A stretch of DNA of 64,000 nucleotides from the sequence record MN794232.1; one strand, written 5' to 3'. The number at the start of each line of letters is the position of its first letter. Positions within the stretch are counted from its first letter, which is position 1. Positions 44,490 to 62,125 of the stretch are shown here, in pieces. The notes beneath the pieces were generated by a model. The model ran no database searches and was not told the origin of the DNA. It saw only the letters and a list, made by a program, of their open reading frames with translations. Both the position numbers and the translations under genes were made by a program.

Positions 44490-45929
44490 TTAAAAGCTGT
44501 AGCGATCAACGCCTACAGTTTTCAGCATGATCTTGACTGGCTCAAGCTCACCACCTAACAATGAAGTCAGGATAGATGGGCTACAACCCGATACCAGTGC
44601 AGTACCCGCTTCGCCAGCTTTAACCGGAACGTTGCCAAGACGACCACGAATGTTCCAGAAGACTAGTTGTGGCATTTCATAGCCAGCACGTGCGTACATA
44701 GCTTTGATTGCGTCGAAGTTTGCACGTTCGCCGCGACCGTACCAACCACCACCAGTATTTGCTTGGTCGAATTCCATGTCGCTCATGATAAGCAACTTAG
44801 TTGGCATTTCTTCTTGTGAAAGATTTGCACGTTTTGCACGCTCTAACAGAACGTTGAAGCACTTACCGATGTTTGTGCTCATGTCTTCACCTGAGCGATT
44901 CATGTTGTCAAGACGCTCTTTTAGTGAGCTACCGCGCAACTGGTGGAAGTGCGGATCGCTTGAGAACGAAATGAACTGATCTTTGAAGATTCCTTCATTG
45001 CGTTCAGCAACATAGATGCCAAGAGACATTGCAACTTGCTTACAAGTCACGCCAGAACGATCTGTACCTGCGTTGATTGGCGTGCTCATAGAGCCAGATA
45101 CGTCAACAACAGGGATGATGCGCTCATCAGAGCCTTCCATGTAGTTCGGCAGAGCTTTCCATTGCTCGTTCGCTACAGACGCATTGCCATGACTAACGCT
45201 CTTAACGACATCATATGGGAACAATGCACCAGCGTTGATCTTCGCTTCACCTTTTTGAAGTGACTCGATGTAGCTTGTGTAACGAGCAGAAGCGTTACGA
45301 CCGAATGCTTGTTGATAACGAGCAGACGCTACAGATGGCAACTTACCAAAGTCGATTGCATCCCATTCTTGCGCACACATCTTCTGTTCAACAGTGTCAG
45401 ACAAAAGTGCTAGAATCTTACGCCACTGCTTCGCAGTTACACCAAGAGACTTGATTGTGCGCTTGAACACATGACCGTTTTTGCTGTTTTCACGTGGGAA
45501 CCACTTAGCAGCAAGACTATTCTTGTCGTTTACAATCGCGTTTGACCACAATGTGATCGCGTCTTTCTCAAGTCTTGTACCGAACGCAGAAATCAAGTCG
45601 TCGAAACGACCTAGTTCTGGAATTTTCGACATTACAGCACGAGCTACGTCAGGCTGCTCATTACAAAGCTTAGTGAATAGAGTACGGAAAGTACCACGTT
45701 CACCCGCACCACCGCGAACATCACGAGACCACAAAAGAATGCGTGTCGCTAGTTCTGGGTTTTCTGCAAACGCACGACCGAACAGTGTTTTAGACTGATC
45801 GTTGCCACGCATAGCAGCAATACCGAAGAACAAGTTTAGACACTCGTTACCTGAAGTGCTGTGAGTAACTGCACCGTTTGCTGTACGTGAATCGTTTGAT
45901 TGCATAGCGTTCATAAATAGACTAGTCAT
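44490..45929 (-). CDS. TROVE-like DUF2828 / vWA protein (Ro60-related architecture)
   Basis: TANGA...SG..CLNLFF, RDVRGGAGER, AAKWFPR, MIDAS DVSGSM, MSTN, SDMEFD, VFWN; start set by GGAG SD. Confidence 0.8.
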   Translation of the reverse strand: MTSLFMNAMQSNDSRTANGAVTHSTSGNECLNLFFGIAAMRGNDQSKTLFGRAFAENPELATRILLWSRDVRGGAGERGTFRTLFTKLCNEQPDVARAVMSKIPELGRFDDLISAFGTRLEKDAITLWSNAIVNDKNSLAAKWFPRENSKNGHVFKRTIKSLGVTAKQWRKILALLSDTVEQKMCAQEWDAIDFGKLPSVASARYQQAFGRNASARYTSYIESLQKGEAKINAGALFPYDVVKSVSHGNASVANEQWKALPNYMEGSDERIIPVVDVSGSMSTPINAGTDRSGVTCKQVAMSLGIYVAERNEGIFKDQFISFSSDPHFHQLRGSSLKERLDNMNRSGEDMSTNIGKCFNVLLERAKRANLSQEEMPTKLLIMSDMEFDQANTGGGWYGRGERANFDAIKAMYARAGYEMPQLVFWNIRGRLGNVPVKAGEAGTALVSGCSPSILTSLLGGELEPVKIMLKTVGVDRYSF

Positions 45930-45962: not shown

Positions 45963-46565
45963 ATGTTTCACATTGTATATCAAATCACAAACTTAATAAA
46001 CAATAAAATTTACGTCGGTAAACATTCAACAGAGAACATCTACGACGATTACATGGGCTCGGGTAAATTGTTAACCAGAGCCATTTCAAAGTACGGTAAA
46101 GAAAATTTCATCAAAGAGATATTATTCGTTTCACATGATGAGACTGAAGCATATCACAAAGAGTCTGAAATTGTCAACGAAAACTTTGTTTTGCGTCAAG
46201 ACACATACAATTTAAAAATCGGTGGTCTTGGTGGATCATCAGGAATCGAATCACCATGTAAAGGTCGTGCGTTGAGTGAAGATACTAAACGAAAAATGAG
46301 AAAAAGTAAACAATTTTCTCAAAATCATTTAGATTATCTGTCAGATAAGTTAACATCATACAACAAATCTCGCACAGGACAATCAAGAGACGACCTTAAA
46401 GGGTGTTCGAACCCGATGCATAAAGGAATGTGGGTTACACCCGCAGGTAAATTTGAATCGTCCAGCGAAGCTGCATTGGTGAACAATTGCAGTCAATCAA
46501 CTGTAGTTCGACGCTGCAAAAACCCAAATTTCGACGATTGGTTTATCGAAAATTCATCCGAGTGA
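45963..46565 (+). mobile_element. GIY-YIG (Seg-like) homing endonuclease
   Basis: IVYQITNLINNKIYVGKH...YMGSG...YNLKIGG; antisense to neighbours; CATAAATA at 45912. Confidence 0.9.
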
Positions 46566-47897: not shown

Positions 47898-47934
47898 ATA
47901 AATACTCTTGTTATCATCAAACAGGACGGTCTAC

Positions 47935-48480
47935 ATGAACTATTTGAAAATTTATGACAGTATAGTGAAACGAGCACAAAAACGCAAGACAATTTCAGGG
48001 TATTTTGAAAGCCATCACATTTTACCGAGGTGTATGGGAGGCAATAACAAAAAATCAAACATCGTTAGATTGACCGCAAAGGAGCACTACATTTCACACT
48101 TATTGTTAGCTAAGATTCACAACACTCGCGGTTTATGGTTAGCCGTCGCATCAATGAGGGGATGCAATGGCGGAGGTGTGAGATTTACAGGATCTATGTA
48201 CGAAACTGCAAAACGAAAAATTTCCGAAAGTATCCGAGGTGAGAATAACCCGAATTACGGTGGTCTCAGAGAAGAAACAAAACAAAAACTTTCAATCAAA
48301 GCCACTGGCAGAAAACACTCACAAGAGACTAAAGATGCTATGAGCAAAAATCGTCGAGGTGAGAATAACGGCATGTACGGAAAGAAACAACCTACCGAAA
48401 CATGCATTCACTGTGGAAAGATTGCGTCGAAATCAAACATCAAACGCTGGCACAATGATAACTGCAAGTTAAATACATGA
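47935..48480 (+). mobile_element. HNH (Mob-like) homing endonuclease with NUMOD3-like repeats
   Basis: ESHHILPRCMGG...NIVRLTAKEHYISH; exact TATAAATA at 47897-47904; antisense. Confidence 0.9.
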
Positions 48481-49121: not shown

Positions 49122-49150
49122 GATTGTTCACCTCTTAGTTAATAGAATAC

Positions 49151-49195
49151 GGGAGACACGGGAATCGAACCCATTGCCTTGACCACATATCTCCC
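49151..49195 (-). pseudogene. tRNA minihelix remnant (acceptor + T arm only)
   Basis: GGGAGAT/GTCTCCC stem, ATGGG-TTCGATT-CCCGT; no CCA. Confidence 0.6.
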
Positions 49196-49219
49196 ACTGA
49201 GAGTTACGCCAATCTGATT

Positions 49220-52149: not shown

Positions 52150-52238
52150 TGGCGGAGATACTGGGAATCGAACCCAGAGAACGCTATTAACGTCCGACAC
52201 CTTAGCAGGGTGCTGTCATACCTTTAGACCATATCTCC
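52150..52238 (-). tRNA. tRNA-Ser(GCT)
   Basis: cloverleaf, long variable arm, CCA. Confidence 0.93.
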
Positions 52239-52243
52239 GTAGA

Positions 52244-52423
52244 TTATTTTTTACCACGCTCTGCTTTGCTAATCTCGACAGCAGCGATTTGTGCGTTTGC
52301 TTCTTTCTCAGTATCATGAGTACCAAGTACTCTACCTTTAGATGAAAGAGCAACCCATTTGTCGCCACGCTTCTCGACTTTCTCAACAAGCTTGTGATAT
52401 TCATCAAATGTTTTAAGTTTCAT
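52244..52423 (-). CDS. 59-aa probable internal head protein (not in ORF track)
   Basis: MKLKTFDEYHKLVE...; GAGG RBS; TATAAATA at 52449-52456. Confidence 0.7.
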   Translation of the reverse strand: MKLKTFDEYHKLVEKVEKRGDKWVALSSKGRVLGTHDTEKEANAQIAAVEISKAERGKK

Positions 52424-52625
52424 GTGTCATCCCTCAGTTAGTTTATTGTATTTATAACTGAACGACTTTTAAACAGTGGCATGCTGCTCTCATGCTCAGA
52501 CACATATTTGCTCTTATTGCAGGCGTGTGCCACGCGCAGCGCAGATCCCTTTTGATAATTTAATGACCAGCGGGACTCTTAGCAGGTCTATTCACTCTCT
52601 TTCGATTCGCGTTGCTAAGTGAATT

Positions 52626-52702
52626 TGGTGCCCAACCCGAGATTCGAACTCGGAACTTCTAGTGTTTGAAACTAGCGACTCTGCCAATTGGCCTAGTTGG
52701 GC
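52626..52702 (-). tRNA. tRNA-Leu(CAA), short variable loop
   Basis: CTAGT-TTCAAAC-ACTAG; CCA. Confidence 0.88.
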
Positions 52703-52706
52703 TTGA

Positions 52707-52809
52707 ATAAGCTGCCGCAACTCTTTAATCCCTAACACCTGTCAGCTTTCGCTCGGCTGAGACCGTTTTTCAACGGCGGTAGTCTAGCTTCGTATAGAAC
52801 GCGGCTTAT
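52707..52809 (-). ncRNA. candidate structured RNA
   Basis: closing ATAAGC/GCTTAT stem; two GAAA-capped hairpins. Confidence 0.45.
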
Positions 52810-52818
52810 GCTAGAGTT

Positions 52819-52895
52819 TGGTACGCACGGGCGGATTCGAACCGCCATCCCTGAGATTTTAAGCCTCATGCCTCTGCCAATTGGACCACGTGCGC
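52819..52895 (-). tRNA. tRNA-Leu(TAA), short variable loop
   Basis: TGAGG-CTTAAAA-TCTCA; CCA. Confidence 0.88.
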
Positions 52896-52897
52896 AT

Positions 52898-52971
52898 TGG
52901 AGCCCGAACAGAGAATCGAACTCTGACCGCGGGATTTGCAATCCCTCATACTTCCATTATACGATTCGGGC
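52898..52971 (-). tRNA. tRNA-Cys(GCA)
   Basis: cloverleaf, CCA. Confidence 0.92.
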
Positions 52972-53074
52972 AATATGTTAGTGCATTGCATGAGCTACTG
53001 GCGATCTTAATGGGTATTTCAAGCATTCAGAATTCCCATGCGCTACTACAATGCTTTTTTCGCTAAATGCACTT

Positions 53075-53151
53075 TGGGGTGACAGACGGGGATCGAACCC
53101 GCATCTTCCGGAATCACAACCCGGGGGTATTTCCACTTCACCCACTGCCAC
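53075..53151 (-). tRNA. tRNA-His(GTG)
   Basis: cloverleaf, C73; position -1 is T. Confidence 0.9.
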
Positions 53152-53205
53152 ACCAAAGTACACTTTGGGATGTTTACGACATCAAACGAATGCGCTCCCT
53201 GTGCA

Positions 53206-53448
53206 TTAATCAGATTTCTTTAAGTAGATACTATCAGGCGATAATTCTCTTGTAAACATATTTTTGAAATAAATTTCAATGTCTGCTTCAGTTGTTGAAG
53301 ACTCAATTTCAAGAGCACGCTCAAGAATCTTGTTACGCTTAAACCCAGCTCGCCAACAATCAAACATAAGTCTGTCCATACGTTGAAGCTTTTCAATTTG
53401 ATTCGAGTTTACGTATTCGTGAGTTTCAAGTAATGCAGGCGTATTCAT
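53206..53448 (-). CDS. hypothetical protein
   Basis: ORF between tRNAs, start MNTP. Confidence 0.55.
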   Translation of the reverse strand: MNTPALLETHEYVNSNQIEKLQRMDRLMFDCWRAGFKRNKILERALEIESSTTEADIEIYFKNMFTRELSPDSIYLKKSD

Positions 53449-53472
53449 AATATAGTTCTCATCATAAAAGAA

Positions 53473-53546
53473 TGGTAGCCCCTGACGGATTCGAGCCGTC
53501 TCTACTTCTGTGTAAAAGAAGCGTACTCCCATTATACTAAGGGGCT
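53473..53546 (-). tRNA. tRNA-Val(TAC)
   Basis: cloverleaf, CCA. Confidence 0.9.
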
Positions 53547-53552
53547 AGAATT

Positions 53553-53628
53553 TGGAGCGTCTACACGGATTCGAACCGAGACGAGTGACTTGGAAGGACA
53601 CCATGCTACCAATTGACATCATAGACGC
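53553..53628 (-). tRNA. tRNA-Gly(TCC)
   Basis: cloverleaf, CCA. Confidence 0.9.
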
Positions 53629-54053
53629 ATTGTTAATCTGAAGCATCAAACAAATCACGTATAGCACGTAGATTTGTAAGCTCTACTGTAAGTGTTCTAA
53701 TAAAGAACGGGTTGGTCTCTTTTGCGAGACGTTTTTCAACATCACGAATTTTATCGCGAATGTTGCCCTTGCTTAGTGTAAAGTAGTCATGCTTCTTTCT
53801 CTTCGTTTGAGGTTAAAATCAGGTTAACGTGCTCATTCACTTCTTGCTCGATTTGCCACTGTTCGTAGACATACTCAGCGTATAAAAGTGTTTCGTACAT
53901 GTTCACCCTTTTTGAATGAATTTAAGCTTACGTTTAAGCTTGCCACGAGATTTATGTCGCTTACACAGTTTAGCACCGTGATAGCTATGATATTGATAAA
54001 AGCTAGTTAGCTTCTTATACAATGATTTCATGCATACCTCATGTTTTTGAATT

Positions 54054-54129
54054 TGGTGGAGACACCGATACTCGAAATCGGATCTAATGGCTTATGAGAC
54101 CATTGCTCTACCACTTGAGCTACATCTCC
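54054..54129 (-). tRNA. tRNA-Met(CAT), probably elongator
   Basis: cloverleaf, CCA. Confidence 0.85.
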
Positions 54130-54155
54130 AAAATCAGTAATTAACTCATTTAATC

Positions 54156-54475
54156 GCACACGGGCTGACACCATATATTTATGGTCTGAGCGAGGAACCA
54201 CATAGTGGGTACTGTCACCTCATCTTAGTTTTGATTGTTTTACATGACGATAACTAGAAACGTTCATAATAATGCCACGCGATACTTCCTGTATCACGGC
54301 TAACTGAGTTAGCAAACTTGCCTTGCGGCTGTAGTGTCGTTTCCGACGAATTAAGTACAGACAATACCGAAGTGTTTTTTCGTCTTTTGCATTAATCGGA
54401 GTTGACTAGCTTATTGATTCTCAACAAGCAAATATCGTCTGTTTCAGCGACGCGCCTATCTGACTATTTCTAGGC
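54156..54475 (-). ncRNA. candidate large structured ncRNA (about 320 nt)
   Basis: no ORF; at least 8 hairpins incl. C(UUCG)G, GAAA and GCAA tetraloops. Confidence 0.6.
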
Positions 54476-54576
54476 AGAGAGAATCTTTCCTTTCAAGCTG
54501 CGCCGAAGCACTACCCAGGTTAAGATCATCACTTCTTTTAAGTAATTTTCAATTGTTTGCTGTATATTGTCTCTCT
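54476..54576 (-). ncRNA. CAGCAA-module RNA G
   Basis: AGAGAGA/TCTCTCT closing stem, ATACAGCAAACAAT. Confidence 0.6.
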
Positions 54577-54634
54577 AATCATACTCATGATATGCCGAAG
54601 CAAAGTATCATTCGCCGCATGATAGAGCTTAATT

Positions 54635-54710
54635 TGGCATCCCCAGAGGGATTTGAACCCACAACCCACGACTTAGAAGGTCGTTGCTCTTCCAATTGAG
54701 CTATGAGGAC
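54635..54710 (-). tRNA. tRNA-Arg(TCT)
   Basis: cloverleaf, CCA. Confidence 0.93.
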
Positions 54711-54786
54711 ATTAAAAGAATTCGATCCATGAGCTATTGCGCAGACGATGGTAGTAAAGAGACTCTGCACTCATGTGATCGAAATT

Positions 54787-54861
54787 TGGTGGACACGCAG
54801 GGAGTCGAACCCTATCCTCCTCATTGCAAGTGAGGCGCTTTCCCAATTAAGCTAACGGCCC
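54787..54861 (-). tRNA. tRNA-Ala(TGC), imperfect acceptor stem
   Basis: G3-U70 present; stem pairs only with a bulge. Confidence 0.75.
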
Positions 54862-54871
54862 AATGTTCGTT

Positions 54872-55081
54872 TTACAACTGTGTGATTGAGATATGATCCC
54901 ATCCGTATAAACCTTCAAGTTCTTCAATAGGCTCACAAACAATGTCAGAAATATATTCAGCAACTTTTGCTTCAATTTCTTCATCAGATAGCTTTTCATC
55001 AATTGCAAAAGCATCTTCATTATTGTTGCCACCGAAATAGCCGCCAATGTCATATTCACACCATACTGAAATATAGTTCAT
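54872..55081 (-). CDS. hypothetical acidic protein
   Basis: GAGAATAACATG; MNYISVWCEYD. Confidence 0.65.
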   Translation of the reverse strand: MNYISVWCEYDIGGYFGGNNNEDAFAIDEKLSDEEIEAKVAEYISDIVCEPIEELEGLYGWDHISITQL

Positions 55082-55105
55082 GTTATTCTCACAGTTGTTT
55101 GAAAA

Positions 55106-55181
55106 TGGTGCCCTGACACGGATTTGAACCGCGAACCTGCTCATTACAAGTGAGCTGCACTGCCAGTTGTGCTATCAGGGC
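55106..55181 (-). tRNA. tRNA-Thr(TGT)
   Basis: cloverleaf, CCA. Confidence 0.93.
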
Positions 55182-55187
55182 GTTACT

Positions 55188-55300
55188 GAGTGTTATTACT
55201 TGCGTCGTCCAGACCAGAGATACCAACTCTGAAAGGGAATCGAACCCCAAACATTTCTTTTCGTAAGAAGAATATTAGTAATTGTTTGCTGAAAACACTC
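55188..55300 (-). ncRNA. circularly permuted tRNA mimic (YrlA-like) RNA F
   Basis: terminal stem, CAGCAAACA bulge, inner stem, variable-like hairpin, T arm, capped acceptor hairpin, D-like hairpin. Confidence 0.75.
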
Positions 55301-55309
55301 TTCGGTATT

Positions 55310-55383
55310 TGGCAGGGGATAACGGATTCGAACCGGTACTGCGTGAGTCAAAGTCACGTATGCTGCCTTTACATCAATCCCCT
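55310..55383 (-). tRNA. tRNA-Gln(TTG)
   Basis: cloverleaf, CCA. Confidence 0.92.
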
Positions 55384-55402
55384 ATTATTCTTAAATTATC
55401 TT

Positions 55403-55478
55403 TGGCGGAACCGACGGGGCTTGAACCCGCTTCCTTTCCCGTGACAGGGGAATATGCACCCAGTTACACCTCGGCTCC
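55403..55478 (-). tRNA. tRNA-Asp(GTC)
   Basis: cloverleaf, CCA. Confidence 0.93.
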
Positions 55479-55550
55479 CCAAAGACAACTTAAAGTAGTT
55501 GCTTTGTTTTTTTTTCAAGTTCACACTTAACGGCAGTGACTCTCCGAATT

Positions 55551-55626
55551 TGGCGGACCGCCCGAGACTCGAACTCGGAACTCCTCGCTTAACAGGCGAG
55601 CACTCTAACCATTGAGTTAGCGATCC
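55551..55626 (-). tRNA. tRNA-Asn(GTT)
   Basis: cloverleaf, CCA. Confidence 0.93.
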
Positions 55627-56000
55627 ATATTCTTTTGTAATGCGTGTTCTTCACGATGGCAGTTAGAACAAAGCATAATGCACTTATCTAACTCAGTTTC
55701 GATTCTCGACCATGATATAGTCTGACTAGAGATACCGAAATCTTTCTCGTTTGGATCAAGATGATGAAACTCTAATGCTTCAATGCATCTATCATACCCG
55801 CATCGTTCACAACAACCACCTTTATATTCAACGGCTCTTAGTTTAGCACGCTTTCTATAAGAAATGACTGCTTCTTTATTCTTTCGTTTTCGTTCAGCAT
55901 CAGTGTGCTTTCGTCGATTCTTACCGTTGTATAAACCAGCACATCGACGACTACAGAATTTATTAAGTGCGTCTGCACCACACTCTAAGCATTTATTCAT
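55617..56000 (-). mobile_element. HNH endonuclease in tRNA cluster
   Basis: CLEC..CSRRC; CERCG...LEFHHLDP...LCSNCHREEH. Confidence 0.85.
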
Positions 56001-56144
56001 TTTTTGAGTTACCTATTTAAGTTTAAAAGATAACTCAGTGATAAAGTGTTTAGGCGCCACATTCGTAAGTGAATGACTCTATTACTACTTAGCAATTACA
56101 TTCAAGCGTTACCAAGAATCATGCCACGTAGCTTTAAATTAAAC

Positions 56145-56202
56145 AGCAATCCTTTTCTCTTTTTGCAAATAAAAGTTTTGTATTGTTTGCTGAAAGATTG
56201 CT
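56145..56202 (-). ncRNA. minimal CAGCAA-module RNA H
   Basis: AGCAATC/GATTGCT stem, TTTCAGCAAACAAT. Confidence 0.55.
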
Positions 56203-56208
56203 TAATTC

Positions 56209-56282
56209 TGGCAGGGACATAGAGATTCGAACTCTAACGAACGGGTTTGGAATCCGCCATGCTGCCGTTACATCATGTCCCT
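56209..56282 (-). tRNA. tRNA-Trp(CCA)
   Basis: cloverleaf, CCA. Confidence 0.9.
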
Positions 56283-56288
56283 AAAATT

Positions 56289-56362
56289 TGGTAGCCCCAG
56301 ACAGACTCGAACTGTCAACGTGCGATTATCGGTCGCGTGTTTTACCGTTAAACTATGGAGCT
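56289..56362 (-). tRNA. tRNA-Ile(GAT), C at position 33
   Basis: loop CCGATAA. Confidence 0.85.
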
Positions 56363-56426
56363 AAAGTGAGCACATTTCAGTGCTCGTGTTAATCGGTTAA
56401 GTGACTAAACTTCCCGGTTAACTAAT

Positions 56427-56525
56427 TGGCGGAAGACTAGGGATTCGAACCCTAACATCACCTCCCGGTGACCGACGGTTTTCAAGACCGTTGCCGCTAC
56501 CCAGAATCTTTCGGCTAAGCCTTCC
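56427..56525 (-). tRNA. tRNA-Ser(TGA), enlarged D loop
   Basis: 99 nt, long variable arm, CCA. Confidence 0.88.
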
Positions 56526-56532
56526 ATTAATT

Positions 56533-56608
56533 TGGTAGCGAGTGCCAGAATCGAACTGACCTAAACTAGCTTATGAGACTAGTGAGTTCACCAGAACTCT
56601 AACTCGCA
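56533..56608 (-). tRNA. tRNA-Met(CAT), initiator-like
   Basis: 1:72 mismatch and A11-U24; lacks the three G-C anticodon-stem pairs. Confidence 0.75.
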
Positions 56609-56710
56609 ATTATTCAACAGCTTGCGTTCTTTGGTCTGTTTATCGCTGTCTGAACTGAGTTCGCCGAGCGATCAATAGATTAAGTTGAATTGCAGTATGC
56701 AAGCTAAATT

Positions 56711-56796
56711 TGGTGGAGCGTAGAGGAATCGAACCTCTCTTCCCATTACGGGACACGGATTTACAGTCCGCTGCCGCACCTTGCGGCTTACGCTCC
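56711..56796 (-). tRNA. tRNA-Tyr(GTA)
   Basis: cloverleaf, variable arm, CCA. Confidence 0.93.
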
Positions 56797-56802
56797 AGAA
56801 TT

Positions 56803-56876
56803 TGGTACTCGATACGGGAGTCGAACCCGTCCTACTTCCTTGAAAGGGAAGTGACCTACCGATAGTCGAATCGAGC
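56803..56876 (-). tRNA. tRNA-Glu(TTC)
   Basis: cloverleaf, CCA. Confidence 0.92.
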
Positions 56877-56939
56877 ATTAAATTGTATATTGATTTGCAA
56901 GCTAATCAACTCGCAAAGCGATACACAATGTATCTAATT

Positions 56940-57016
56940 TGGTACGCCGCCCTGGACTCGAACCAGACACCTGAGAGTTAAAAGCTCCCTGCTCTTCCAT
57001 GATGAGCTACCGACGC
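56940..57016 (-). tRNA. tRNA-Lys(TTT)
   Basis: cloverleaf, CCA. Confidence 0.92.
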
Positions 57017-57027
57017 ATTATAAAATC

Positions 57028-57102
57028 TGGTGGGTCGCAAGAGATTCGAACTCTCACCGTTCTGGTTAAAAGCCAGATGTACTACCGTTATACGAACGAC
57101 CC
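57028..57102 (-). tRNA. tRNA-Lys(TTT), second copy
   Basis: cloverleaf, CCA. Confidence 0.92.
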
Positions 57103-57108
57103 AGAATG

Positions 57109-57183
57109 TGGTGCACCCCCTCGGAATCGAACCGAGCACTGCGGGACTTCAATCCGTCGCTTTTCCTGATAAGCTAAGGGTGC
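57109..57183 (-). tRNA. tRNA-Phe(GAA), distorted anticodon arm
   Basis: GGA-TTGAAG-TCC gives a 6-nt loop, or a mismatched stem with a 7-nt loop. Confidence 0.65.
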
Positions 57184-57184
57184 A

Positions 57185-57262
57185 TGGTACGCAAGAAGAG
57201 ATTCGAACTCTTAACTTCTGGTTTCTAAGACCAGTGCCTCTGCCAGATTGGGCTACTTGCGC
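57185..57262 (-). tRNA. tRNA-Leu(TAG), short variable loop
   Basis: CTGGT-CTTAGAA-ACCAG; CCA. Confidence 0.88.
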
Positions 57263-57297
57263 ATTGTTTGTTTTTGAACGTTACTTCGTTCTTCTTC

Positions 57298-57418
57298 ATT
57301 GTACATGATGTTTATATCGTTGTAAACATCTTTTTTGAAAAACTTTTCATTAACTTTTGAATGATATTTCGCTTTTCTCTATTGTACATGATGTTTATAT
57401 CGTTGTAAACATCTTTTT
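57298..57418 (-). repeat. exact 38-bp direct repeat = tandem promoters
   Basis: 57298-57335 and 57381-57418; TTTACA-17-TACAAT with 8-bp inverted repeat. Confidence 0.85.
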
Positions 57419-57574
57419 AAATTTATTTTGAAGAACTTAACGTTTTCATTTTTCTATGTGTTAATCTTAACACTCGCTCAAGACATCTTAAACACTAATT
57501 TGTGAAAAAGTTCGTTAAATTCTATCATCACGACAGTACTTAACGAGATACGGTCCTAAGCGTATCAAATTAAT

Positions 57575-57700
57575 TCAGAATGGTGAGACTTGAACTCACT
57601 TCGAGTAATAGCGTAAACTAACAGTTGTTGCCAGAGGCTATCAATTATTCTCTACCGAGTATGTTGCAACTCTGCATTTCCCCATTTCTAGGCATTCTGA
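57575..57700 (-). ncRNA. tRNA-like RNA E (acceptor + T arm, expanded core, no CCA)
   Basis: TCAGAATG/CATTCTGA; GTGAG-TTCAAGT-CTCAC. Confidence 0.6.
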
Positions 57701-57704
57701 AATA

Positions 57705-57780
57705 TGGCACCCCACAGAAGATTCGAACTTCTAACCTGCGCCTTCGTAGGACGCTGCTCTTCCAATTGAGCTAGTAGGGC
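57705..57780 (-). tRNA. tRNA-Arg(ACG)
   Basis: cloverleaf, CCA. Confidence 0.93.
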
Positions 57781-57787
57781 ATTAAAC

Positions 57788-57864
57788 TGGTCCGTGACAA
57801 GCGATTCGAACGCTTAACTTCTCCGCCCCAAACGGAGTACTCTACCAGATTGAGCTAGTCACGG
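57788..57864 (-). tRNA. tRNA-Pro(TGG)
   Basis: cloverleaf, CCA. Confidence 0.93.
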
Positions 57865-57873
57865 ATTTTAAAT

Positions 57874-57947
57874 TGGTCGGGACGAAGAGACTCGAACTCT
57901 TACCACATGCTCCCAAAGCATGAACGCTACCTTTACGCCACGTCCCG
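57874..57947 (-). tRNA. tRNA-Pro(TGG), second copy
   Basis: cloverleaf, CCA. Confidence 0.92.
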
Positions 57948-58079
57948 TTTGTTCTTTAACTTTGTTTATCATACTCTGCTTTCAAAGTACGTTAAACAAA
58001 ATTTTTGATTTTCTTTCGCCCATAAAAAAGGACGCTACGTGCGTCCTCAAGTATACTTCTATGTTATACTATTGGACTA

Positions 58080-58206
58080 CGTTTGTGGAGACCACTCTTG
58101 TTTCGCACACGGATTCGCTAGATACACAAATTCTGAGCGCAGAAAATCGCTGCGTAAAATCATATCAGAATGTGTATTCGAATGTGTCATGGAAACTCTC
58201 TAAACG
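58080..58206 (-). ncRNA. candidate rod-shaped ncRNA
   Basis: nested stems CGTTT/AAACG, ATACACA/TGTGTAT, TTCTGA/TCAGAA, CGCAG/CTGCG; downstream terminator at about 58025-58049. Confidence 0.5.
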
Positions 58207-58315
58207 TTAAAATAAAAATGTTTTTGTTTGTATAATAGTACTTATAACACCAAATTTGACGATTTGCGGTATTTTCGCAGAAAATTGAAAAAAAAATCAA
58301 CTTTCTGCGATTTTC

Positions 58316-58561
58316 TTATCGACCTAGGTGTTTTCGCTTGTTCATTTCAACGAGGATTTCATCGTTGTAATGACGGTTCAGTTCAACATACTTCTTGTGC
58401 TGATCTGAAGTCAACTCGTTGGTGTCATTCAGATGTTTCAAGAATCCAAGAGGTTTGCGAAACGACTTGCGATATTCGTTCAGACGCTCGTCCGTTAGAT
58501 TATGCAGTTGTTTCGGAGTCAGTAACGTTTTATTGATGTCAAAACTCATGTTGTACCTCAC
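58316..58561 (-). CDS. hypothetical protein
   Basis: GAGG RBS before MSFD. Confidence 0.6.
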   Translation of the reverse strand: MRYNMSFDINKTLLTPKQLHNLTDERLNEYRKSFRKPLGFLKHLNDTNELTSDQHKKYVELNRHYNDEILVEMNKRKHLGR

Positions 58562-58574
58562 TTGTTATTAAAAT

Positions 58575-58690
58575 TGGTAGTCGGGGCTGGATTCGAACCA
58601 GCGACCACGTGCTTAACAGGCAATTGAAGGAGTGCTGGAGCGATACTTGACAGTATCATTCTTCGTGCTCTACCACTGAGCTACCCGACT
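58575..58690 (-). ncRNA. tRNA-Asn-like RNA A with 41-nt insertion in anticodon stem
   Basis: removing the insert gives a perfect 75-nt tRNA-Asn(GTT) with CCA. Confidence 0.85.
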
Positions 58691-58695
58691 ATGAA

Positions 58696-59217
58696 TTATT
58701 TAACTTTGAACTTCAAATTACGCCAGTCAAAGTTTCGTTTGTTCTTTGTGTTGTAGAACGTGCCCCAATCAATAGCAATCGGACAGTTCTTACTACCTAC
58801 ACGAGCGATAAAGACATCGTGAGTCTCGCTGTAACGCTCTCTAAGCTCTTTTAAACGCTTATCGTAGTTAGCGATATACTCTGCACACGCTTTGTTGTAA
58901 GCTGCTTTAGAGAAGCGTTCGTCACTCGAAAATACATTACCCAGATAAGGTCGAATAACACGAACTCGTTCTTTAGACCAACCCATACTAAAGCTGTTTT
59001 CAATCTCACCTGAGATTTCACCAGTCTTCTTACATCTAGCAAGAATGACCCAGCAACGTTCACGCCGAAAATCTTTTCGTACGTACACGTTAACGTGCTT
59101 GTCAATGTACTCTTGATAACGAGCGTTATACTCAGCACGCAGTTTATTGCGCACTTCAGGCGACATTGCAGCCCGTTCTTCTTTCGAAAACGCTTGTGCG
59201 AATTTCAATGGTTTCAT
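58696..59217 (-). CDS. hypothetical basic protein
   Basis: GAGGA RBS, start MKPL. Confidence 0.65.
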   Translation of the reverse strand: MKPLKFAQAFSKEERAAMSPEVRNKLRAEYNARYQEYIDKHVNVYVRKDFRRERCWVILARCKKTGEISGEIENSFSMGWSKERVRVIRPYLGNVFSSDERFSKAAYNKACAEYIANYDKRLKELRERYSETHDVFIARVGSKNCPIAIDWGTFYNTKNKRNFDWRNLKFKVK

Positions 59218-59230
59218 TATAATTTCCTCT

Positions 59231-59470
59231 TGGCGCCGCTCGTGTGAATCGAACACACGTCAAACACAACACCTCGTCCACCCAATTAGAGTTTCGAAGT
59301 AAGAGCTAATCAGCATTTCGGAGCAGTCGAGCGTTATTTCTACGAGTGAGCTTTCGACAACTCACACGCACTTTCTACCCGGTCCCAGTGATTCGGTACC
59401 AACGCAGGTTGCGAACCTACGTCTGCACTAATGCTGGGAAAACACTGCGTATTGTACACCAGTTAGCGGC
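59231..59470 (-). ncRNA. 240-nt RNA I with tRNA-like ends and CCA
   Basis: GCCGCT/AGCGGC-G-CCA; GTGTG-TTCGATT-CACAC. Confidence 0.75.
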
Positions 59471-59472
59471 AT

Positions 59473-59703
59473 TTAAAGATAGCTATCAAAGACAGCATCA
59501 TCAACTTCTTCAATATTGATGTCAGCGTAACACTCATTCGCAATTGCTTGAATTTCATCTATTGAAACTGTACCTGCGTACAATACAACAGCGTCGTTCG
59601 GAATCACGACATCACACATGTATTTGTTAAACATTGCAGTTCTGAAATCAGAATCAACAGAGTAACCGTGCATTGATGTGATAACTAGCAATTTATGTGA
59701 CAT
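59473..59703 (-). CDS. hypothetical protein
   Basis: GAGGA RBS; upstream TTGACA promoter. Confidence 0.65.
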   Translation of the reverse strand: MSHKLLVITSMHGYSVDSDFRTAMFNKYMCDVVIPNDAVVLYAGTVSIDEIQAIANECYADINIEEVDDAVFDSYL

Positions 59704-59782
59704 AATGTTTTCCTCGTGTAGTTGATAATGTGTATACTACACGTTGATGAAACGCCTGTCAACAACTTTTTCAAATTATTTT

Positions 59783-59859
59783 TGGTAGCCCCTCTCGGAT
59801 TCGAACCGAGAACCTGACGATTATGAGTCGTCTGCTACTACCGTTACAGCTAAGGGGCT
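59783..59859 (-). tRNA. tRNA-Ile2-like (CAT)
   Basis: AGCCCCT acceptor and GACTCATAATCG arm resemble enterobacterial Ile2. Confidence 0.8.
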
Positions 59860-60226
59860 ATCGTTCTAGAAATCTACCGACTTTAGCAGCGAAGATGTTT
59901 GCTTCTTCTGCAATCAAAGCAGTTGATTTCATTTGATGAAAAGCGTCTTGTTGATGCAGAACATCTAGTTTACCAGCGCATTTCATCAGTTCTTTTACTG
60001 ATTGCATAATCTCAATGTTATCAAGCTGACTCGTGTCAGGGTGATGATTGAGACTATCCAAGACAGGGAGTACTTGTTGATAGTAACCCATGCCGATGAA
60101 GTTTATCATAAGTCTGTACTGCATTTCAACAGCAAATGTACAATATTTTCGAAGATTGCGTTTTACAATCTCACAGCGATGTAAGATACAATCAAGTTCG
60201 TCATTTATGTCATCAAACTTATTCAT
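59858..60226 (-). CDS. hypothetical protein
   Basis: GAGG RBS, start MNKFDD. Confidence 0.6.
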   Translation of the reverse strand: MNKFDDINDELDCILHRCEIVKRNLRKYCTFAVEMQYRLMINFIGMGYYQQVLPVLDSLNHHPDTSQLDNIEIMQSVKELMKCAGKLDVLHQQDAFHQMKSTALIAEEANIFAAKVGRFLER

Positions 60227-60240
60227 AAAACCTCGAAAAT

Positions 60241-60360
60241 TGGTGGAGAGTGATGGATTTGAACCACCGACCAAAAGATTTACCAGTTAAGGTTTGCAGC
60301 ATGAATGCTTGTCAGTATTCTTTAACATTCTTTTGCTCTACCAGACTGAGCTAACTCTCC
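60241..60360 (-). ncRNA. tRNA-like RNA B with 50-nt structured anticodon loop
   Basis: canonical acceptor, D and T arms and CCA; AAAGA/TCTTT stem encloses module. Confidence 0.85.
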
Positions 60361-60365
60361 ATTGT

Positions 60366-60476
60366 ATTACTACTTTGTTTCGCTTGTCAGGGCGTCGAAA
60401 CGCTACCTAACCAAGGATTCGAACCTTTTAACCAACACCTCGCGAAAATTATTTTTCTCGTTGGCAAAGTAGTAAT
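60366..60476 (-). ncRNA. second permuted tRNA mimic RNA J
   Basis: 12-bp terminal stem, hairpin, AAGG-TTCGAAT-CCTT T arm, UUCG-capped hairpin. Confidence 0.6.
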
Positions 60477-60487
60477 GTAAAAACATA

Positions 60488-60613
60488 TAGTTGCGGGTGC
60501 AGGATTCGAACCTACATCACGATCTTATGAATGATATGCGAAATTGATTGCCGTACAGATTCTTATCAGAATCAGTTTTGTGCTACGTGTGCTACCACTT
60601 ACACCAACCCGCA
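60488..60613 (-). ncRNA. tRNA-like RNA C with module insertion
   Basis: D and T arms canonical; 15-bp terminal stem 60484-60621; ends ACTA, not CCA. Confidence 0.8.
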
Positions 60614-60882
60614 ACTATATGCTTTCGGGATGCTTACGCAGGTTCTTCTCTACGTAAGCACAGTTCCTCAATGTATATTTTGCCTTAGCCAATCACAACA
60701 CAACCCAACCCAATATCGTGCGCTTTAATTACGGGATTGATGACCCGTTCGCATGTGATTAGCGTAAAAGTATGATTACGCACCTTTTCTTCTTCAATGT
60801 CCAAGGCAAAGAGGACTATGAATACTAGTGCGAGAAGATATACAATCAAATTGCTCACCTCGCTTAATAAGTGAGAGTACAT

Positions 60883-61005
60883 TGGTCGAGTGTAACGGAA
60901 TCGAACCGTTCCCACGATCTCCCTATGATATGCGTAAATTGGTTGCTGAATATAATCATGTCTGATTACAGTATGCTACGTGTGCTGCCACTACACCAAC
61001 ACTCG
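60883..61005 (-). ncRNA. tRNA-like RNA D with module insertion
   Basis: paralog of C; CCA present; 21-bp perfect inverted repeat 60873-60893/60999-61019. Confidence 0.82.
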
Positions 61006-61020
61006 ACCAATGTACTCTCG

Positions 61021-61172
61021 ATATTTTAAATGTGCGCTACTTGCACGCCGACTGAGCGAATTTTAACTCAGCTAGTTTTTGATTGAGACCTCGTCCGCTA
61101 AGACTATTCCCTGCACGCCAGAACTTATACTGGCTCTATGTATTCATTGCGGCTAACGCACATTTAAAATAT
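61021..61172 (-). ncRNA. candidate 152-nt structured RNA
   Basis: 16-bp perfect closing stem, internal GCCAG/CTGGC and CTGAG/CTCAG hairpins; strand inferred from cluster. Confidence 0.55.
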
Positions 61173-61284
61173 TACTCATCTTCAGCGAAGAGACAGAAAC
61201 GATGAGTCTAGTCTGTTTAATCAATGTTGTTCATCTTCAAGAAGAGGCGAGAACGATGAACTCAGCTCGCTTAATCAACTGTGT

Positions 61285-61410
61285 TAATCTTATCAGCTTC
61301 TCAGCGAAAGTCAACATCTTTTTCAAATATTTCATCGAGTTGAAAGTTTGTTTTCTGTCTCTCGACTCGATGAAATACATTCTACATCCTTTTCAGATGA
61401 AGTCAACAAC
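61285..61410 (-). promoter_or_regulatory. tandem sigma70-type promoters heading the tRNA/ncRNA cluster
   Basis: TTGACT-17-TAGAAT and TTGACT..TAAGAT with A-rich UP regions. Confidence 0.65.
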
Positions 61411-61422
61411 TATTTTAACTTT

Positions 61423-61677
61423 TTAAACGGAAATGATAATGCCGCTTTCAGTCTCACCTCGTTCAAGCGCAGCGTGCTTGATCTGAAGTTGTGATACTGC
61501 TTGCTGAAGTTCAATAATAGCTTTGTCATAAAGCTTGTTGTTCTCTTTAAGCAAAGCAATCTGATCGGTCTGCATACCAATGATGTACGTTAGTAGAACA
61601 ACGTTCTCATCAGTCGTCAGCGTTTCAGGCGCTTCATTGTACTTCTTCAGCACCGCTTCGGTAGATAGATCAGTCAT
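61423..61677 (-). CDS. hypothetical coiled-coil protein
   Basis: coupled to 57B. Confidence 0.65.
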   Translation of the reverse strand: MTDLSTEAVLKKYNEAPETLTTDENVVLLTYIIGMQTDQIALLKENNKLYDKAIIELQQAVSQLQIKHAALERGETESGIIISV

Positions 61678-62125
61678 TATTAGCAACCCATTCTAGATCT
61701 AGTGGTTCGATATATTCATCGACAAGGCGAACCTCTGTATTGATGAACATAGGTGTGATTACGTCGTCATAAGATAATGTGACGTGCGGAGTATAGTCAG
61801 GGTAATCGTGAGTACCACCGATAGAGATAAGGTCTTCGTGACGTTCTACAAGAGCAGGACATGACATCTTAGCAACGACCGCGTGTTTACCGTCTTGCGT
61901 TTTCCAACAGTCAACTTGTTCAACAGTGGCAACGAAAGTGGTATCTACAACAGGCACATCAATTTGCTTACGACTATAAAGCACAGTCACGTGAAATTTA
62001 TCTGGATCTAACGGATTTTTTAGACGAAGCGTTTTTTGCAAGCGAACTAGCTCTTGCTTACTTGCTTCGTCTAATTTGATACCAACGTAAGTTCCCTGAC
62101 TCTCAAGGAACTTAGATAGTTTCAT
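61670..62125 (-). CDS. 57B: gp57B / Acb1-like 2H phosphoesterase
   Basis: two HxT motifs (HVTVLYS, HVTLSY); synteny with 57A and 1. Confidence 0.88.
   Translation of the reverse strand: MKLSKFLESQGTYVGIKLDEASKQELVRLQKTLRLKNPLDPDKFHVTVLYSRKQIDVPVVDTTFVATVEQVDCWKTQDGKHAVVAKMSCPALVERHEDLISIGGTHDYPDYTPHVTLSYDDVITPMFINTEVRLVDEYIEPLDLEWVANND

What the first reader, a model, noticed from the sequence alone, without database searches (positions are those of the whole stretch)
60484..61019. Paralogous RNAs C and D: module inserted at the same site as in A, with acceptor stems extended to 15 and 21 perfect bp
Seen: both read GCAC-A-CG-TAGCA..ACTG-[hairpin with GATA or GACA loop]-[bulge]-AATTT..CGCATATC-[loop]-GATCG-TG. 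The residual anticodon hairpin has an 8-nt loop (ATTCATAA) in C and a 7-nt loop (ATAGGGA) in D. The 5' leader is fully complementary to the 3' end and trailer: 60484-60498/60607-60621 and 60873-60893/60999-61019. This buries the CCA in D, and C has ACTA instead. Hairpin sequences differ but pairing is kept, i.e. covariation between paralogs. Inference: selected to avoid aminoacylation or to need RNase III-type processing.
Basis: seen in the sequence. Interest (0 to 1): 0.8.

Follow-up and report, generated by a model that had tools for sequence, protein, structure and literature searches.

The report
Phage tRNA-shaped Y-like RNAs
Two conserved phage RNAs look like tRNAs but carry a 50-base extra arm in the anticodon stem and have both ends locked in a long helix; the extra arm is an RNA element that turns up beside Ro60-type RNA-binding protein genes in very different phages, so they are most likely partner RNAs of the phage's own Ro60-like protein, not decoding tRNAs.

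Summary
The window is Vibrio phage VH1_2019, a KVP40-like phage. RNAs C (60479-60626) and D (60873-61019), both on the minus strand, have tRNA acceptor, D and T arms. A 49-50 nt module splits the 5' strand of the anticodon stem after base pair 2. Leader and trailer pair for 13-14 bp beyond the acceptor stem, against 0-1 bp in the 27 ordinary tRNAs. Orthologs keep these helices through many compensatory changes. About 50 distinct relatives occur in vibriophages, a cyanophage, an Aeromonas phage and uncultured viral contigs. They share a covarying hairpin followed by the motif C-N-G-C-A-A-Y. The new result is that this hairpin-plus-CAGCAA element also occurs free-standing beside phage Ro60-like genes (DUF2828/DUF7788): 34 copies observed against 2.75 expected on the gene strand and none on the other strand. 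Module-bearing tRNA-likes lie next to that gene in three unrelated lineages. The window encodes the same protein at 44490-45917, and its model matches solved Ro60 structures. Best reading: Y-RNA-like tRNA mimics with sealed ends, not charged. No binding, RNA-end or charging experiment exists. Excised-intron and decoy readings are not excluded.

The parts
60873..61019 (-). RNA D: tRNA-like core (60887-61005) plus a 14-bp leader/trailer extension.
   Evidence: Reading and fold. It is 98-100% identical in phages whose flanks are 85-90% identical. Covariation is shown.
60999..61019 (-). D, 5' strand of the 21-bp end helix (leader plus acceptor 5' strand). It contains GGUCGAG.
60873..60893 (-). D, 3' strand of the end helix (acceptor 3' strand, A73, CCA, trailer).
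60930..60978 (-). D module, 49 nt, inserted between nt 28 and 29 of the anticodon stem. The hairpin is 60951-60970 and the motif UUCAGCAACC is 60941-60950.
   Evidence: Parse. The motif is invariant in the ortholog alignment.
60917..60929 (-). D residual anticodon hairpin: ATC, loop ATAGGGA, GAT.
   Evidence: The loop changes to ATTAGGA or CTTCAAA in orthologs.
60479..60626 (-). RNA C: tRNA-like core plus a 13-bp extension, giving a 20-bp end helix, followed by a U-run.
60536..60585 (-). C module, 50 nt. The hairpin is 60558-60573 and the motif UACGGCAAUC is 60546-60555.
60522..60535 (-). C residual anticodon hairpin with the 8-nt loop ATTCATAA.
   Evidence: The same 8-nt loop is found in marine viral contigs.
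60685..60849 (-). Conserved 54-aa ORF between D and C, with an N-terminal hydrophobic helix. Its Shine-Dalgarno sequence directly follows D.
   Evidence: The conserved AAGCGAGG is seen.
60244..60360 (-). RNA A, the KVP40 'tRNA-Pseudo-4' type. It is a module-bearing paralog with a contiguous anticodon stem.
58578..58690 (-). RNA B, the 'tRNA-Pseudo-3' type. It has an Asn-type loop CTGTTAA, the module at 58623-58663, and a free ACCA end.
44490..45917 (-). Ro60-like RNA-binding protein gene (DUF2828 + DUF7788, PHROG 850). It is the presumed protein partner.

Best explanation
C and D are stable non-coding RNAs built on a tRNA body. They are phage counterparts of Y RNAs, the RNA partners of Ro60.

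The tRNA part (acceptor, D and T arms) gives an L-shaped fold. The 49-50 nt arm protruding from the anticodon stem presents a hairpin followed by single-stranded C-N-G-C-A-A-Y. I propose that this arm is the recognition element of the Ro60-like ring protein encoded at 44490-45917.

The long leader/trailer helix keeps both ends paired. RNase P and 3' trimming therefore cannot produce a free CCA end, so the RNAs are not charged and do not decode.

By analogy with Y RNAs, the RNA would tether or gate the Ro60-like protein with respect to something that binds tRNA shapes, or with respect to a host exoribonuclease.

Shown: the structure, its conservation, the family, and the genomic link to Ro60-like genes. 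Inferred: binding, end status, and the downstream effect.
For: 1. Structure under selection.
- Every C and D ortholog has 13-15 extra end pairs, with many double-sided changes.
- The module hairpin occurs as 23 distinct stems, mostly with G-N-N-A loops.
- D is 98-100% identical across phages whose flanks are 85-90% identical.

2. The module counts for more than the anticodon.
- C-N-G-C-A is present in 34 of 38 distinct modules, against 3% of shuffles.
- It is invariant in D orthologs, while the anticodon loops change between orthologs: AGG/UAG/UCA in D, and UCAU/UUCC/UUC/UCU/UCA in C.

3. Link to the Ro60-like gene.
- Module-bearing tRNA-likes lie next to the gene in cyanophage BUCT-ZZ01 (H106).
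- The same holds in Aeromonas phage APT65, with three copies within 1.2 kb.
- Five viral contigs fetched by an RNA pattern alone also contain the gene.
- [AT]CAGCAA[ACT] within 1 kb of 13 Ro60-like genes gives 34 observed against 2.75 expected on the gene strand (Poisson p 2e-25) and 0 on the other strand.
- These loci come from phages of Listeria, Staphylococcus, Enterococcus, Mycobacterium, Campylobacter, Klebsiella, E. coli, Aeromonas and cyanobacteria.
- The copies follow covarying hairpins.

4. The window protein.
- It is PHROG 850 at E 5e-171 and DUF7788/DUF2828 in Pfam.
- Its AF2 model matches Thermus-phage Ro60 and Xenopus Ro60 at E 2e-8 to 2e-7, TM about 0.5.

5. Precedent.
- Bacterial and phage Y RNAs mimic tRNA and lie near Ro60 genes (PMC4201824).
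- A phage Ro60 binds phage-encoded Y-like RNAs and host PNPase (PMC12135203).
Against: - In this phage the gene lies about 15 kb from C and D, not within the roughly 4 kb usual for YrlA.
- No binding or expression data exist.
- The CGAA-type motif known to be contacted by Ro60 is absent from C. In D it is only approximated, by GUCGAGUG.
- The motif count in the window's own tRNA region is only modestly raised: 5 observed against 1.05 expected, p 0.004.
- The AF2 model has moderate confidence (pLDDT 67, from 5 sequences).
- CAGCAA copies also sit 3' of ordinary tRNAs, so the motif could be a processing or transcription signal of tRNA arrays that merely travels with Ro60-like genes, which themselves tend to lie in tRNA arrays.
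- A natural isolate, TCU-VP03-AIR1, lacks C, so C is dispensable at least there.
Confidence: 0.5

Rival explanations
1. Intron-containing tRNA precursors. The module is cut out and the two halves, held together by the acceptor helix, are rejoined by a phage or host RNA ligase. This would give working tRNAs: a Pro-like one from D and a CAU-type with an 8-nt loop from C.
For: - Deleting the module in silico turns 41 of 41 family members into ARAGORN-callable tRNAs, against 2 of 41 before deletion.
- The five anticodon-stem pairs are always complementary.
- Most loops keep U33 and a purine at position 37.
- The junction sequences are conserved: the insert starts with UA and ends with AU.
- B keeps an Asn loop from vibriophages to a cyanophage.
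Against: - There is no bulge-helix-bulge motif and no group I features, and Rfam gives no hit.
- No bacterial enzyme is known to excise such an insert from a stem.
- Anticodons differ among orthologs while the single strands of the insert are invariant.
- Free-standing modules exist without any tRNA.
- The Pseudo-5 and A types leave no proper anticodon loop.
- The sealed ends and missing CCA of C do not fit a tRNA destined for charging.
- The phage already has Asn and Pro tRNAs.
- The neighbouring gene annotated as 'RNA ligase' (57B) is Acb1, not a ligase.
Confidence: 0.15
2. Ro60-independent decoys. These would be tRNA look-alikes that soak up a host tRNA-targeting defence nuclease or another tRNA-binding factor. 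The extra arm and sealed ends would keep them out of translation and make them nuclease-resistant.
For: - The tRNA core is intact and the anticodon loops are variable, as expected under an arms race.
- The RNAs lie beside an anti-defence gene, Acb1.
- Phage tRNAs are known to counter tRNA-cleaving defences (PMC10264068, PMC11464382).
Against: - It does not explain why the same hairpin-CAGCAA element clusters at Ro60-like genes in phages of unrelated hosts.
- It does not explain why the module is the most conserved part.
Confidence: 0.15
3. Cis-acting mRNA end structures. D would be a 5' stabiliser and C a 3' stabiliser or terminator of the small-ORF transcript, or both would be RNase III punctuation sites of a polycistronic early transcript.
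For: - The D - Shine-Dalgarno - 54-aa ORF - C - U-run arrangement is conserved.
- Another helix-closed element, F, abuts D.
- From my own knowledge, not checked here: T4 species 1 RNA is an RNase III substrate in vitro.
Against: - It does not need, or explain, a tRNA core plus a conserved module.
- Relatives in other phages have ordinary ends and no such ORF.
- It is compatible with, rather than exclusive of, the main explanation.
Confidence: 0.1
4. Decaying tRNA pseudogenes hit by a small insertion, with no function. This is what the database annotation 'tRNA-Pseudo' or 'tRNA-OTHER' implies.
For: - They are annotated as pseudo-forms (PMC3468402, PMC5107563).
- C has been lost in one isolate.
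Against: - There is strong purifying selection, with compensatory substitutions in four helices.
- The family spans very distant phages.
Confidence: 0.05

Closest known systems
YrlA-type bacterial and phage Y RNAs, partners of Ro60/Rsr (Chen et al. 2014, PMC4201824)
   Same: They are non-coding RNAs that combine a tRNA-like domain (T and D arms with tRNA tertiary signatures) with a separate protein-binding module. They are encoded in genomes that carry a Ro60-family gene, and phages have them.
   Different: YrlA is circularly permuted (T arm, closed acceptor stem-loop, then D arm), and its ends emerge where the anticodon stem would be. It carries GNCGAAN0-1G. C and D keep the normal tRNA order, keep a residual anticodon hairpin, carry a hairpin-CNGCAAY arm instead, and lie 15 kb from the gene.
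Deinococcus radiodurans Yrn1 (as described in PMC4201824)
   Same: The 5'/3' ends form the long helix where a tRNA has its acceptor stem. The D-like element comes before the T arm, and a short 'anticodon arm' lies between them. This is the same topology as C and D.
   Different: Yrn1 has only a partial D arm and no inserted arm. Its end helix is the Ro60 site. For C and D the end helices vary in sequence between paralogs.
Thermus phage phiLo phiRo60 with Yrl1/Yrl2 (PMC12135203; PDB 9l5y)
   Same: It is a phage-encoded Ro60-fold protein with phage-encoded partner RNAs, and it forms a complex with host PNPase. It is the best structural match of the window protein's model.
   Different: The Yrl RNAs are simple stem-bulge-stem RNAs with a CGAA motif. 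They are not tRNA-shaped and have no CAGCAA element described.
T4 stable RNAs C and D (species 1 and 2)
   Same: They are small stable RNAs of unknown role in the tRNA region of a T4-type phage, with a T-arm-like element in rnaC (PMC3014915).
   Different: They share no module and no sequence similarity with the window RNAs, and they sit at the other end of the tRNA cluster.
Intron-containing tRNAs (archaeal/eukaryal BHB introns; bacterial group I introns)
   Same: An insert in the anticodon arm whose removal restores a cloverleaf.
   Different: The position is 28/29 in the stem rather than 37/38. There is no bulge-helix-bulge. The insert is far too short for group I. It carries conserved single-stranded sequence and also exists free-standing.

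Membership tests
Canonical decoding tRNA | Acceptor stem, D arm and T arm with the conserved U8, A14, G18-G19 and T-loop. | tested here: met
   Manual parse.
Canonical decoding tRNA | Contiguous 5-bp anticodon stem with a 7-nt loop; recognised by tRNA finders. | tested here: not met
   The stem is split by 49-50 nt, and C has an 8-nt loop. ARAGORN and the Rfam tRNA model do not call C or D, even at E up to 10.
Canonical decoding tRNA | Single-stranded 3' N73-CCA end, and an anticodon conserved among orthologs. | tested here: not met
   C has no CCA and D's CCA is paired. The anticodon loops differ among orthologs.
YrlA-type Y RNA | tRNA-like domain with T and D arms. | tested here: met
YrlA-type Y RNA | Permuted order: T arm, closed acceptor stem-loop, D arm. 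| tested here: not met
   C and D have the normal tRNA order. A true YrlA-type arrangement was seen for comparison in mycobacteriophage DuncansLeg.
YrlA-type Y RNA | GNCGAAN0-1G motif near the 5' end. | tested here: inconclusive
   The D leader has GUCGAGUG, one mismatch, and it is not kept in K566. C has nothing similar.
YrlA-type Y RNA | Encoded within about 4 kb of the Ro60 gene, on the same strand. | tested here: inconclusive
   In the window the strand is the same but the distance is 15 kb. Relatives in BUCT-ZZ01, APT65 and five viral contigs are within 0.2-2.5 kb.
YrlA-type Y RNA | Physically bound by the Ro60 ortholog. | not testable with these tools
   This needs immunoprecipitation or EMSA.
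Ro60/TROVE protein family (for the partner gene 44490-45917) | HEAT-repeat ring followed by a vWA domain. | tested here: met
   The AF2 model (pLDDT 67) matches Ro60 chains 9l5y, 1yvr and 2i91 over the full length, with probability 1.00 and E 2e-8 to 2e-7. The vWA domain also matches alone. The protein is homologous to mycobacteriophage 'Ro-like' proteins.
BHB (splicing-endonuclease) tRNA intron | Two 3-nt bulges separated by a 4-bp helix at the exon-intron borders. | tested here: not met
   By inspection of the sequence and the parses, the 3' strand of the stem is continuous and no such motif can be drawn.
Group I intron or known small ribozymes | Match to the curated covariance models. | tested here: not met
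   Rfam returns no such match in 58000-62000 at E up to 10.
T4 rnaC/rnaD | Sequence or module similarity. | tested here: not met
   a T arm only, no module.

The most novel reading that the evidence does not exclude
The hairpin-CAGCAAY element is a portable recognition tag for a large and so far unstudied branch of phage Ro60 proteins (DUF2828/DUF7788; 710 phage records). Phages graft it into the anticodon stem of tRNA bodies, and this turns tRNAs into Y RNAs. That would show directly how tRNA-mimicking Y RNAs arise. It would also imply a Ro60 RNP that docks onto tRNA-handling machinery, such as defence nucleases, synthetases or exoribonucleases, during infection.
Probability: 0.3. Interest if true: 0.85.

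Novelty: new variant of a known kind. Interest (0 to 1): 0.72.

Why it matters
- The function of Ro60-Y RNA particles in bacteria and phages is still largely open, and the RNA partners of most phage Ro60-like proteins are unknown.
- If correct, this work supplies a sequence motif and a family of candidate partner RNAs for a protein present in hundreds of phages that infect Gram-positive, Gram-negative, actinobacterial and cyanobacterial hosts.
- It re-labels genes that have been carried as 'pseudo-tRNAs' in KVP40-type genomes since 2003.
- It offers natural examples of tRNA scaffolds that carry a functional insert.
- It makes the question 'what do phage Ro60 proteins bind and why' directly testable in laboratory Vibrio natriegens and V. 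parahaemolyticus phage systems.

Tried and rejected
- A gapped pattern scan of viral contigs gave 117 loci that were all chance hits. A tighter pattern was needed.
- A short closing helix (P0) between the first and last bases of the module looked plausible by eye (GC/GC, GAA/UUC, and an 8-bp case in D479). It was no better than mismatched linker/tail pairs (own mean 2.8 against cross mean 2.76, permutation p 0.45). It is not claimed.
- RNAalifold's alternative D-stem and CAU/GUG pairing was rejected because it fails in D479_1 and B, where the split-stem model holds.
- The BHB intron, group I intron and known-ribozyme readings were rejected (and inspection).
- The T4 rnaC/rnaD homology idea was rejected.
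- The idea that the neighbouring 57B 'RNA ligase' reseals the RNA was rejected, because 57B is Acb1, the anti-CBASS phosphodiesterase.
- The module's C-N-G-C-A-A is what made tRNAscan-based papers report 'GCA/TGC pseudo anticodons'. It is not an anticodon loop, because U33 is not conserved.
- No covariance model was built. The structure string needed for a correct model was judged not worth the risk, and BLAST, parsing and ARAGORN answered the membership questions.
- The original KVP40 genome paper (PMC180978) is not held in the library.

Full report
IDENTITY OF THE WINDOW

The region is 100% identical to Vibrio phage VH1_2019 (MN794232), a KVP40-like Schizotequatrovirus. Window position 1 corresponds to record position 124001. 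All RNAs discussed are on the minus strand. They lie upstream of an array of 27 ordinary tRNA genes at 52150-59859. They lie downstream of genes 3, 1, 57A and 57B.

THE OBSERVATION

- D (60873-61019) has a tRNA core at 60887-61005. It comprises a C1-G72 acceptor stem, U8, a GUGU/GCAC D stem with an AGUGGCA loop, and A26. Then follow C27-G28, a 49-nt insert, a 3-bp stem with the 7-nt loop AUAGGGA, C42-G43, a 4-nt variable loop, a normal T arm, and A73-CCA.
- Fourteen further leader bases pair with A73-CCA and the trailer. This gives 21 uninterrupted Watson-Crick pairs.
- C has the same build with an 8-nt loop AUUCAUAA, and A-CUA in place of A-CCA. It has 15 Watson-Crick end pairs, which extend to 20 pairs with one G.U (60607-60626 / 60479-60498), followed by a U-run.
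- Both fold far better than shuffles, with z of -5.6 and -7.2.
- The 27 ordinary tRNAs of the window have 0-1 leader/trailer pairs.
- ARAGORN and the Rfam tRNA model miss C and D. Rfam finds the two relatives A (60244-60360) and B (58578-58690) by skipping 45- and 54-nt insertions.

CONSERVATION

Fifty-one vibriophage records carry the C/D region at 72-100% identity.

- In alignments of representative orthologs, D's end helix, acceptor stem, insert hairpin and T stem all change by compensatory substitutions. An example is GAGAG../..CUCUC changing to UAGAG../..CUCUA or GAAAG../..CUUUC.
- The D arm, the start of the insert (ACGUAGCA), the tetraloop, UAUUCAGCAACCAA and GCAUAUC are invariant.
- RNAalifold on 16 sequences reports 32 of 47 pairs with double-sided changes.
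- D and B are 98-100% identical in phages whose surrounding DNA is 85-90% identical.
- Every C and D ortholog has 13-15 extra end pairs.
- The anticodon loops are not conserved. D has AUAGGGA, AUUAGGA or CUUCAAA. C has five different loops of 7 or 8 nt.
- Selection therefore acts on the scaffold and the insert, not on decoding identity.

A WIDER FAMILY

The sources were the related phage loci, a D-arm/junction pattern search of IMG/VR (filtered), and a simple scan of all fetched loci for T arm plus acceptor pairing. Together they gave about 50 distinct 'long tRNAs' of 109-135 nt. They come from KVP40-like phages, Vibrio phage D479 (five copies), Synechococcus phage BUCT-ZZ01 (two copies) and uncultured viral contigs.

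Almost all members parse the same way:
- the top two anticodon-stem pairs, usually C27-G43 and G28-C42;
- an insert that starts with UA and ends with AU;
- a lower 3-bp stem and a loop.

The insert has three parts:
- an A-rich linker;
- a 5-8 bp hairpin, found as 23 different stems, mostly with G-N-N-A loops;
- single-stranded Y-C-N-G-C-A-A-Y. C-N-G-C-A is present in 34 of 38 modules, against 3% of shuffles.

The tRNA bodies are of different kinds: Asn, Pro, Glu, Gly, Lys and CAU types. Removing the insert in silico makes ARAGORN call a tRNA in 41 of 41 cases, against 2 of 41 before removal. Some members (KVP40 'Pseudo-5', A) carry the module inside an intact 5-bp stem with no proper anticodon loop. 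Extended end helices are restricted to C, D and three D479 copies. All other members have ordinary ends, mostly with CCA. The literature I could search only calls these genes pseudo-forms (PMC3468402, PMC5107563).

THE LINK TO A Ro60-LIKE PROTEIN

A gene 2.3 kb from the module RNA in contig L145 hit PHROG 850, 'RNA-binding protein', and Pfam DUF2828 + DUF7788. A tblastn search found this family in 710 phage records.

Position of the gene relative to module-bearing tRNA-likes:
- In BUCT-ZZ01 it lies directly upstream of a tRNA-Met and the two module RNAs.
- In VH1_2019 it maps to window 44490-45917, minus strand. This is confirmed by Pfam at 1e-45 and 7.5e-30 and by PHROG 850 at 5e-171.
- Mycobacteriophage members are annotated 'Ro-like'.
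- D479 has it in the same synteny.
- Aeromonas phage APT65, an unrelated 85-kb phage, has three module-bearing tRNA-likes within 1.2 kb of the gene.
- Five contigs fetched only by the RNA pattern contain the gene in their short flanks.
- In coliphage phiSUSP1, Klebsiella phage KP13-26 and Listeria phage P100 the gene sits at or inside the tRNA array.

An AF2 model of the window protein (pLDDT 67) matches Ro60 of Thermus phage phiLo and Xenopus Ro60 over its full length.

THE SAME ELEMENT, FREE-STANDING

The 390-nt gap after the mycobacteriophage gene holds a YrlA-type permuted tRNA-like with GGUCGAAG. It also holds three copies of ACAGCAAY, each next to a stem.

Scanning 13 loci from very different phages gave the following:
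- [AT]CAGCAA[ACT] occurs 34 times within 1 kb of the gene on the gene strand, against 2.75 expected (p 2e-25).
- It never occurs on the other strand.
- Twelve of the 13 loci have at least one copy.
- The copies are tandem units, each a hairpin followed by the motif. In Enterococcus phage EA1 the hairpins covary.
- In APT65 two of the units even begin with ACGUAG or ACGUAA, like the insert in C and D.

The module of C and D is therefore a discrete RNA element. It exists both alone and grafted into tRNA bodies, and it travels with Ro60-like genes.

In the window itself, copies also follow several ordinary tRNAs (52130, 54564, 55293, 56194). One overlaps the start codon of the Ro60-like gene. The enrichment in the tRNA region is modest, at 5 against 1.05 expected.

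INTERPRETATION

Ro60 proteins work with Y RNAs. [quoted passage not shown] A phage Ro60 has been shown to bind phage-encoded Y-like RNAs and host PNPase (PMC12135203).

C and D fit this logic. They have a tRNA-shaped domain, a separate conserved module tied genomically to a Ro60-family gene, and, as in Deinococcus Yrn1, a long 5'/3' helix where a tRNA has its free acceptor end. The sealed ends should block RNase P, 3' trimming and charging. That step is inference from established tRNA-processing knowledge, not a result.

They are not members of the YrlA family as defined. They have no permutation and no clear GNCGAA motif, and they lie 15 kb from the gene. I therefore file them as a new variant that works like a Y RNA.

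RIVAL READINGS

- The excised-intron reading is kept alive by the perfect restoration of cloverleaves. It is weakened by the variable anticodons, the free-standing modules, the loop-less variants and the lack of any plausible excision enzyme. The adjacent 'RNA ligase' 57B is in fact Acb1.
- A Ro60-independent decoy role remains possible.
- A cis role as mRNA end structures for the conserved 54-aa ORF between D and C also remains possible. It is compatible with the main reading.
- The pure-pseudogene reading is contradicted by the conservation data.
- One isolate, TCU-VP03-AIR1, has lost C (and A) to a homing-endonuclease cassette. Other phages swap the element between C and A. This part of the locus is therefore a variable slot, whereas D and B are universal in the KVP40 group.

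LIMITS

No expression, end-mapping, binding or charging data were available. The co-occurrence test rests on the loci I could fetch, not on a census of all genomes. The protein model has moderate confidence. The motif statistics use a simple composition-based expectation.

Noticed in passing
window 61020-61176 (-): Element F is a roughly 155-nt structured RNA that directly abuts D. It is closed by a 17-bp helix, and it and its internal hairpins covary in all KVP40-like phages. It has no T arm and contains CCGCAAU. The fold z-score is -4.4.
   Followed up: partly
window 60365-60475 (-): Element E lies between C and A. It has a 12-bp end helix, a T-arm-like AAGG-UUCGAAU-CCUU and a CUGACAAG hairpin. 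Among the fetched loci it is present only in VH1 and phi-ST2. Other phages have a 'Pseudo-5' type module RNA in this slot.
   Followed up: partly
window 61670-62125 (-): Gene 57B, annotated 'RNA ligase' in many records, matches Pfam Acb1 (anti-CBASS phosphodiesterase) at E 1.7e-46.
   Followed up: yes
window 60685-60849 (-): A conserved 47-54 aa ORF lies between D and C. It has a hydrophobic N-terminus and a C-terminal KAHD..LC. Its Shine-Dalgarno sequence immediately follows D. It has no PHROG or Pfam match.
   Followed up: partly
window 49130-49200 (-): An intergenic tRNA-like minihelix with a 7-bp acceptor stem (GGGAGAU/GUCUCCC) and a T arm but no D or anticodon arm. No tool calls it.
   Followed up: no
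window 52130, 54564, 55293, 56194 (-): Free-standing WWCAGCAAM copies lie 10-25 nt after the CCA of ordinary tRNAs. One more copy overlaps the start codon of the Ro60-like gene (about 45935), which hints at autoregulation.
   Followed up: partly
window 61180-61430 (-): A conserved non-coding stretch upstream of F contains two about 47-nt direct repeats and three sigma-70-like promoter matches.
   Followed up: no
window 45963-46565 (+) and 47908-48480 (+): Two homing-endonuclease genes lie on the opposite strand close to the Ro60-like gene.
   Followed up: no
L010 3390-4140 (Vibrio phage TCU-VP03-AIR1): C is cut off at the start of its leader helix and replaced by a homing-endonuclease cassette. 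A is also absent. This is a natural deletion variant.
   Followed up: partly
L165 2426-2977 (Listeria phage P100): A ROOL-like RNA (86 bits, below the gathering score of 99.1) lies between tRNAs and the Ro60-like gene, followed by three ACAGCAAU units.
   Followed up: no
L137 4238-4542 / L138 5144-5448: An uncultured phage with three tandem module RNAs also encodes a permuted tmRNA inside its tRNA array.
   Followed up: no
window 54790-54861 (-): A tRNA found by Rfam (45.7 bits, UGC anticodon region) but not by ARAGORN.
   Followed up: no
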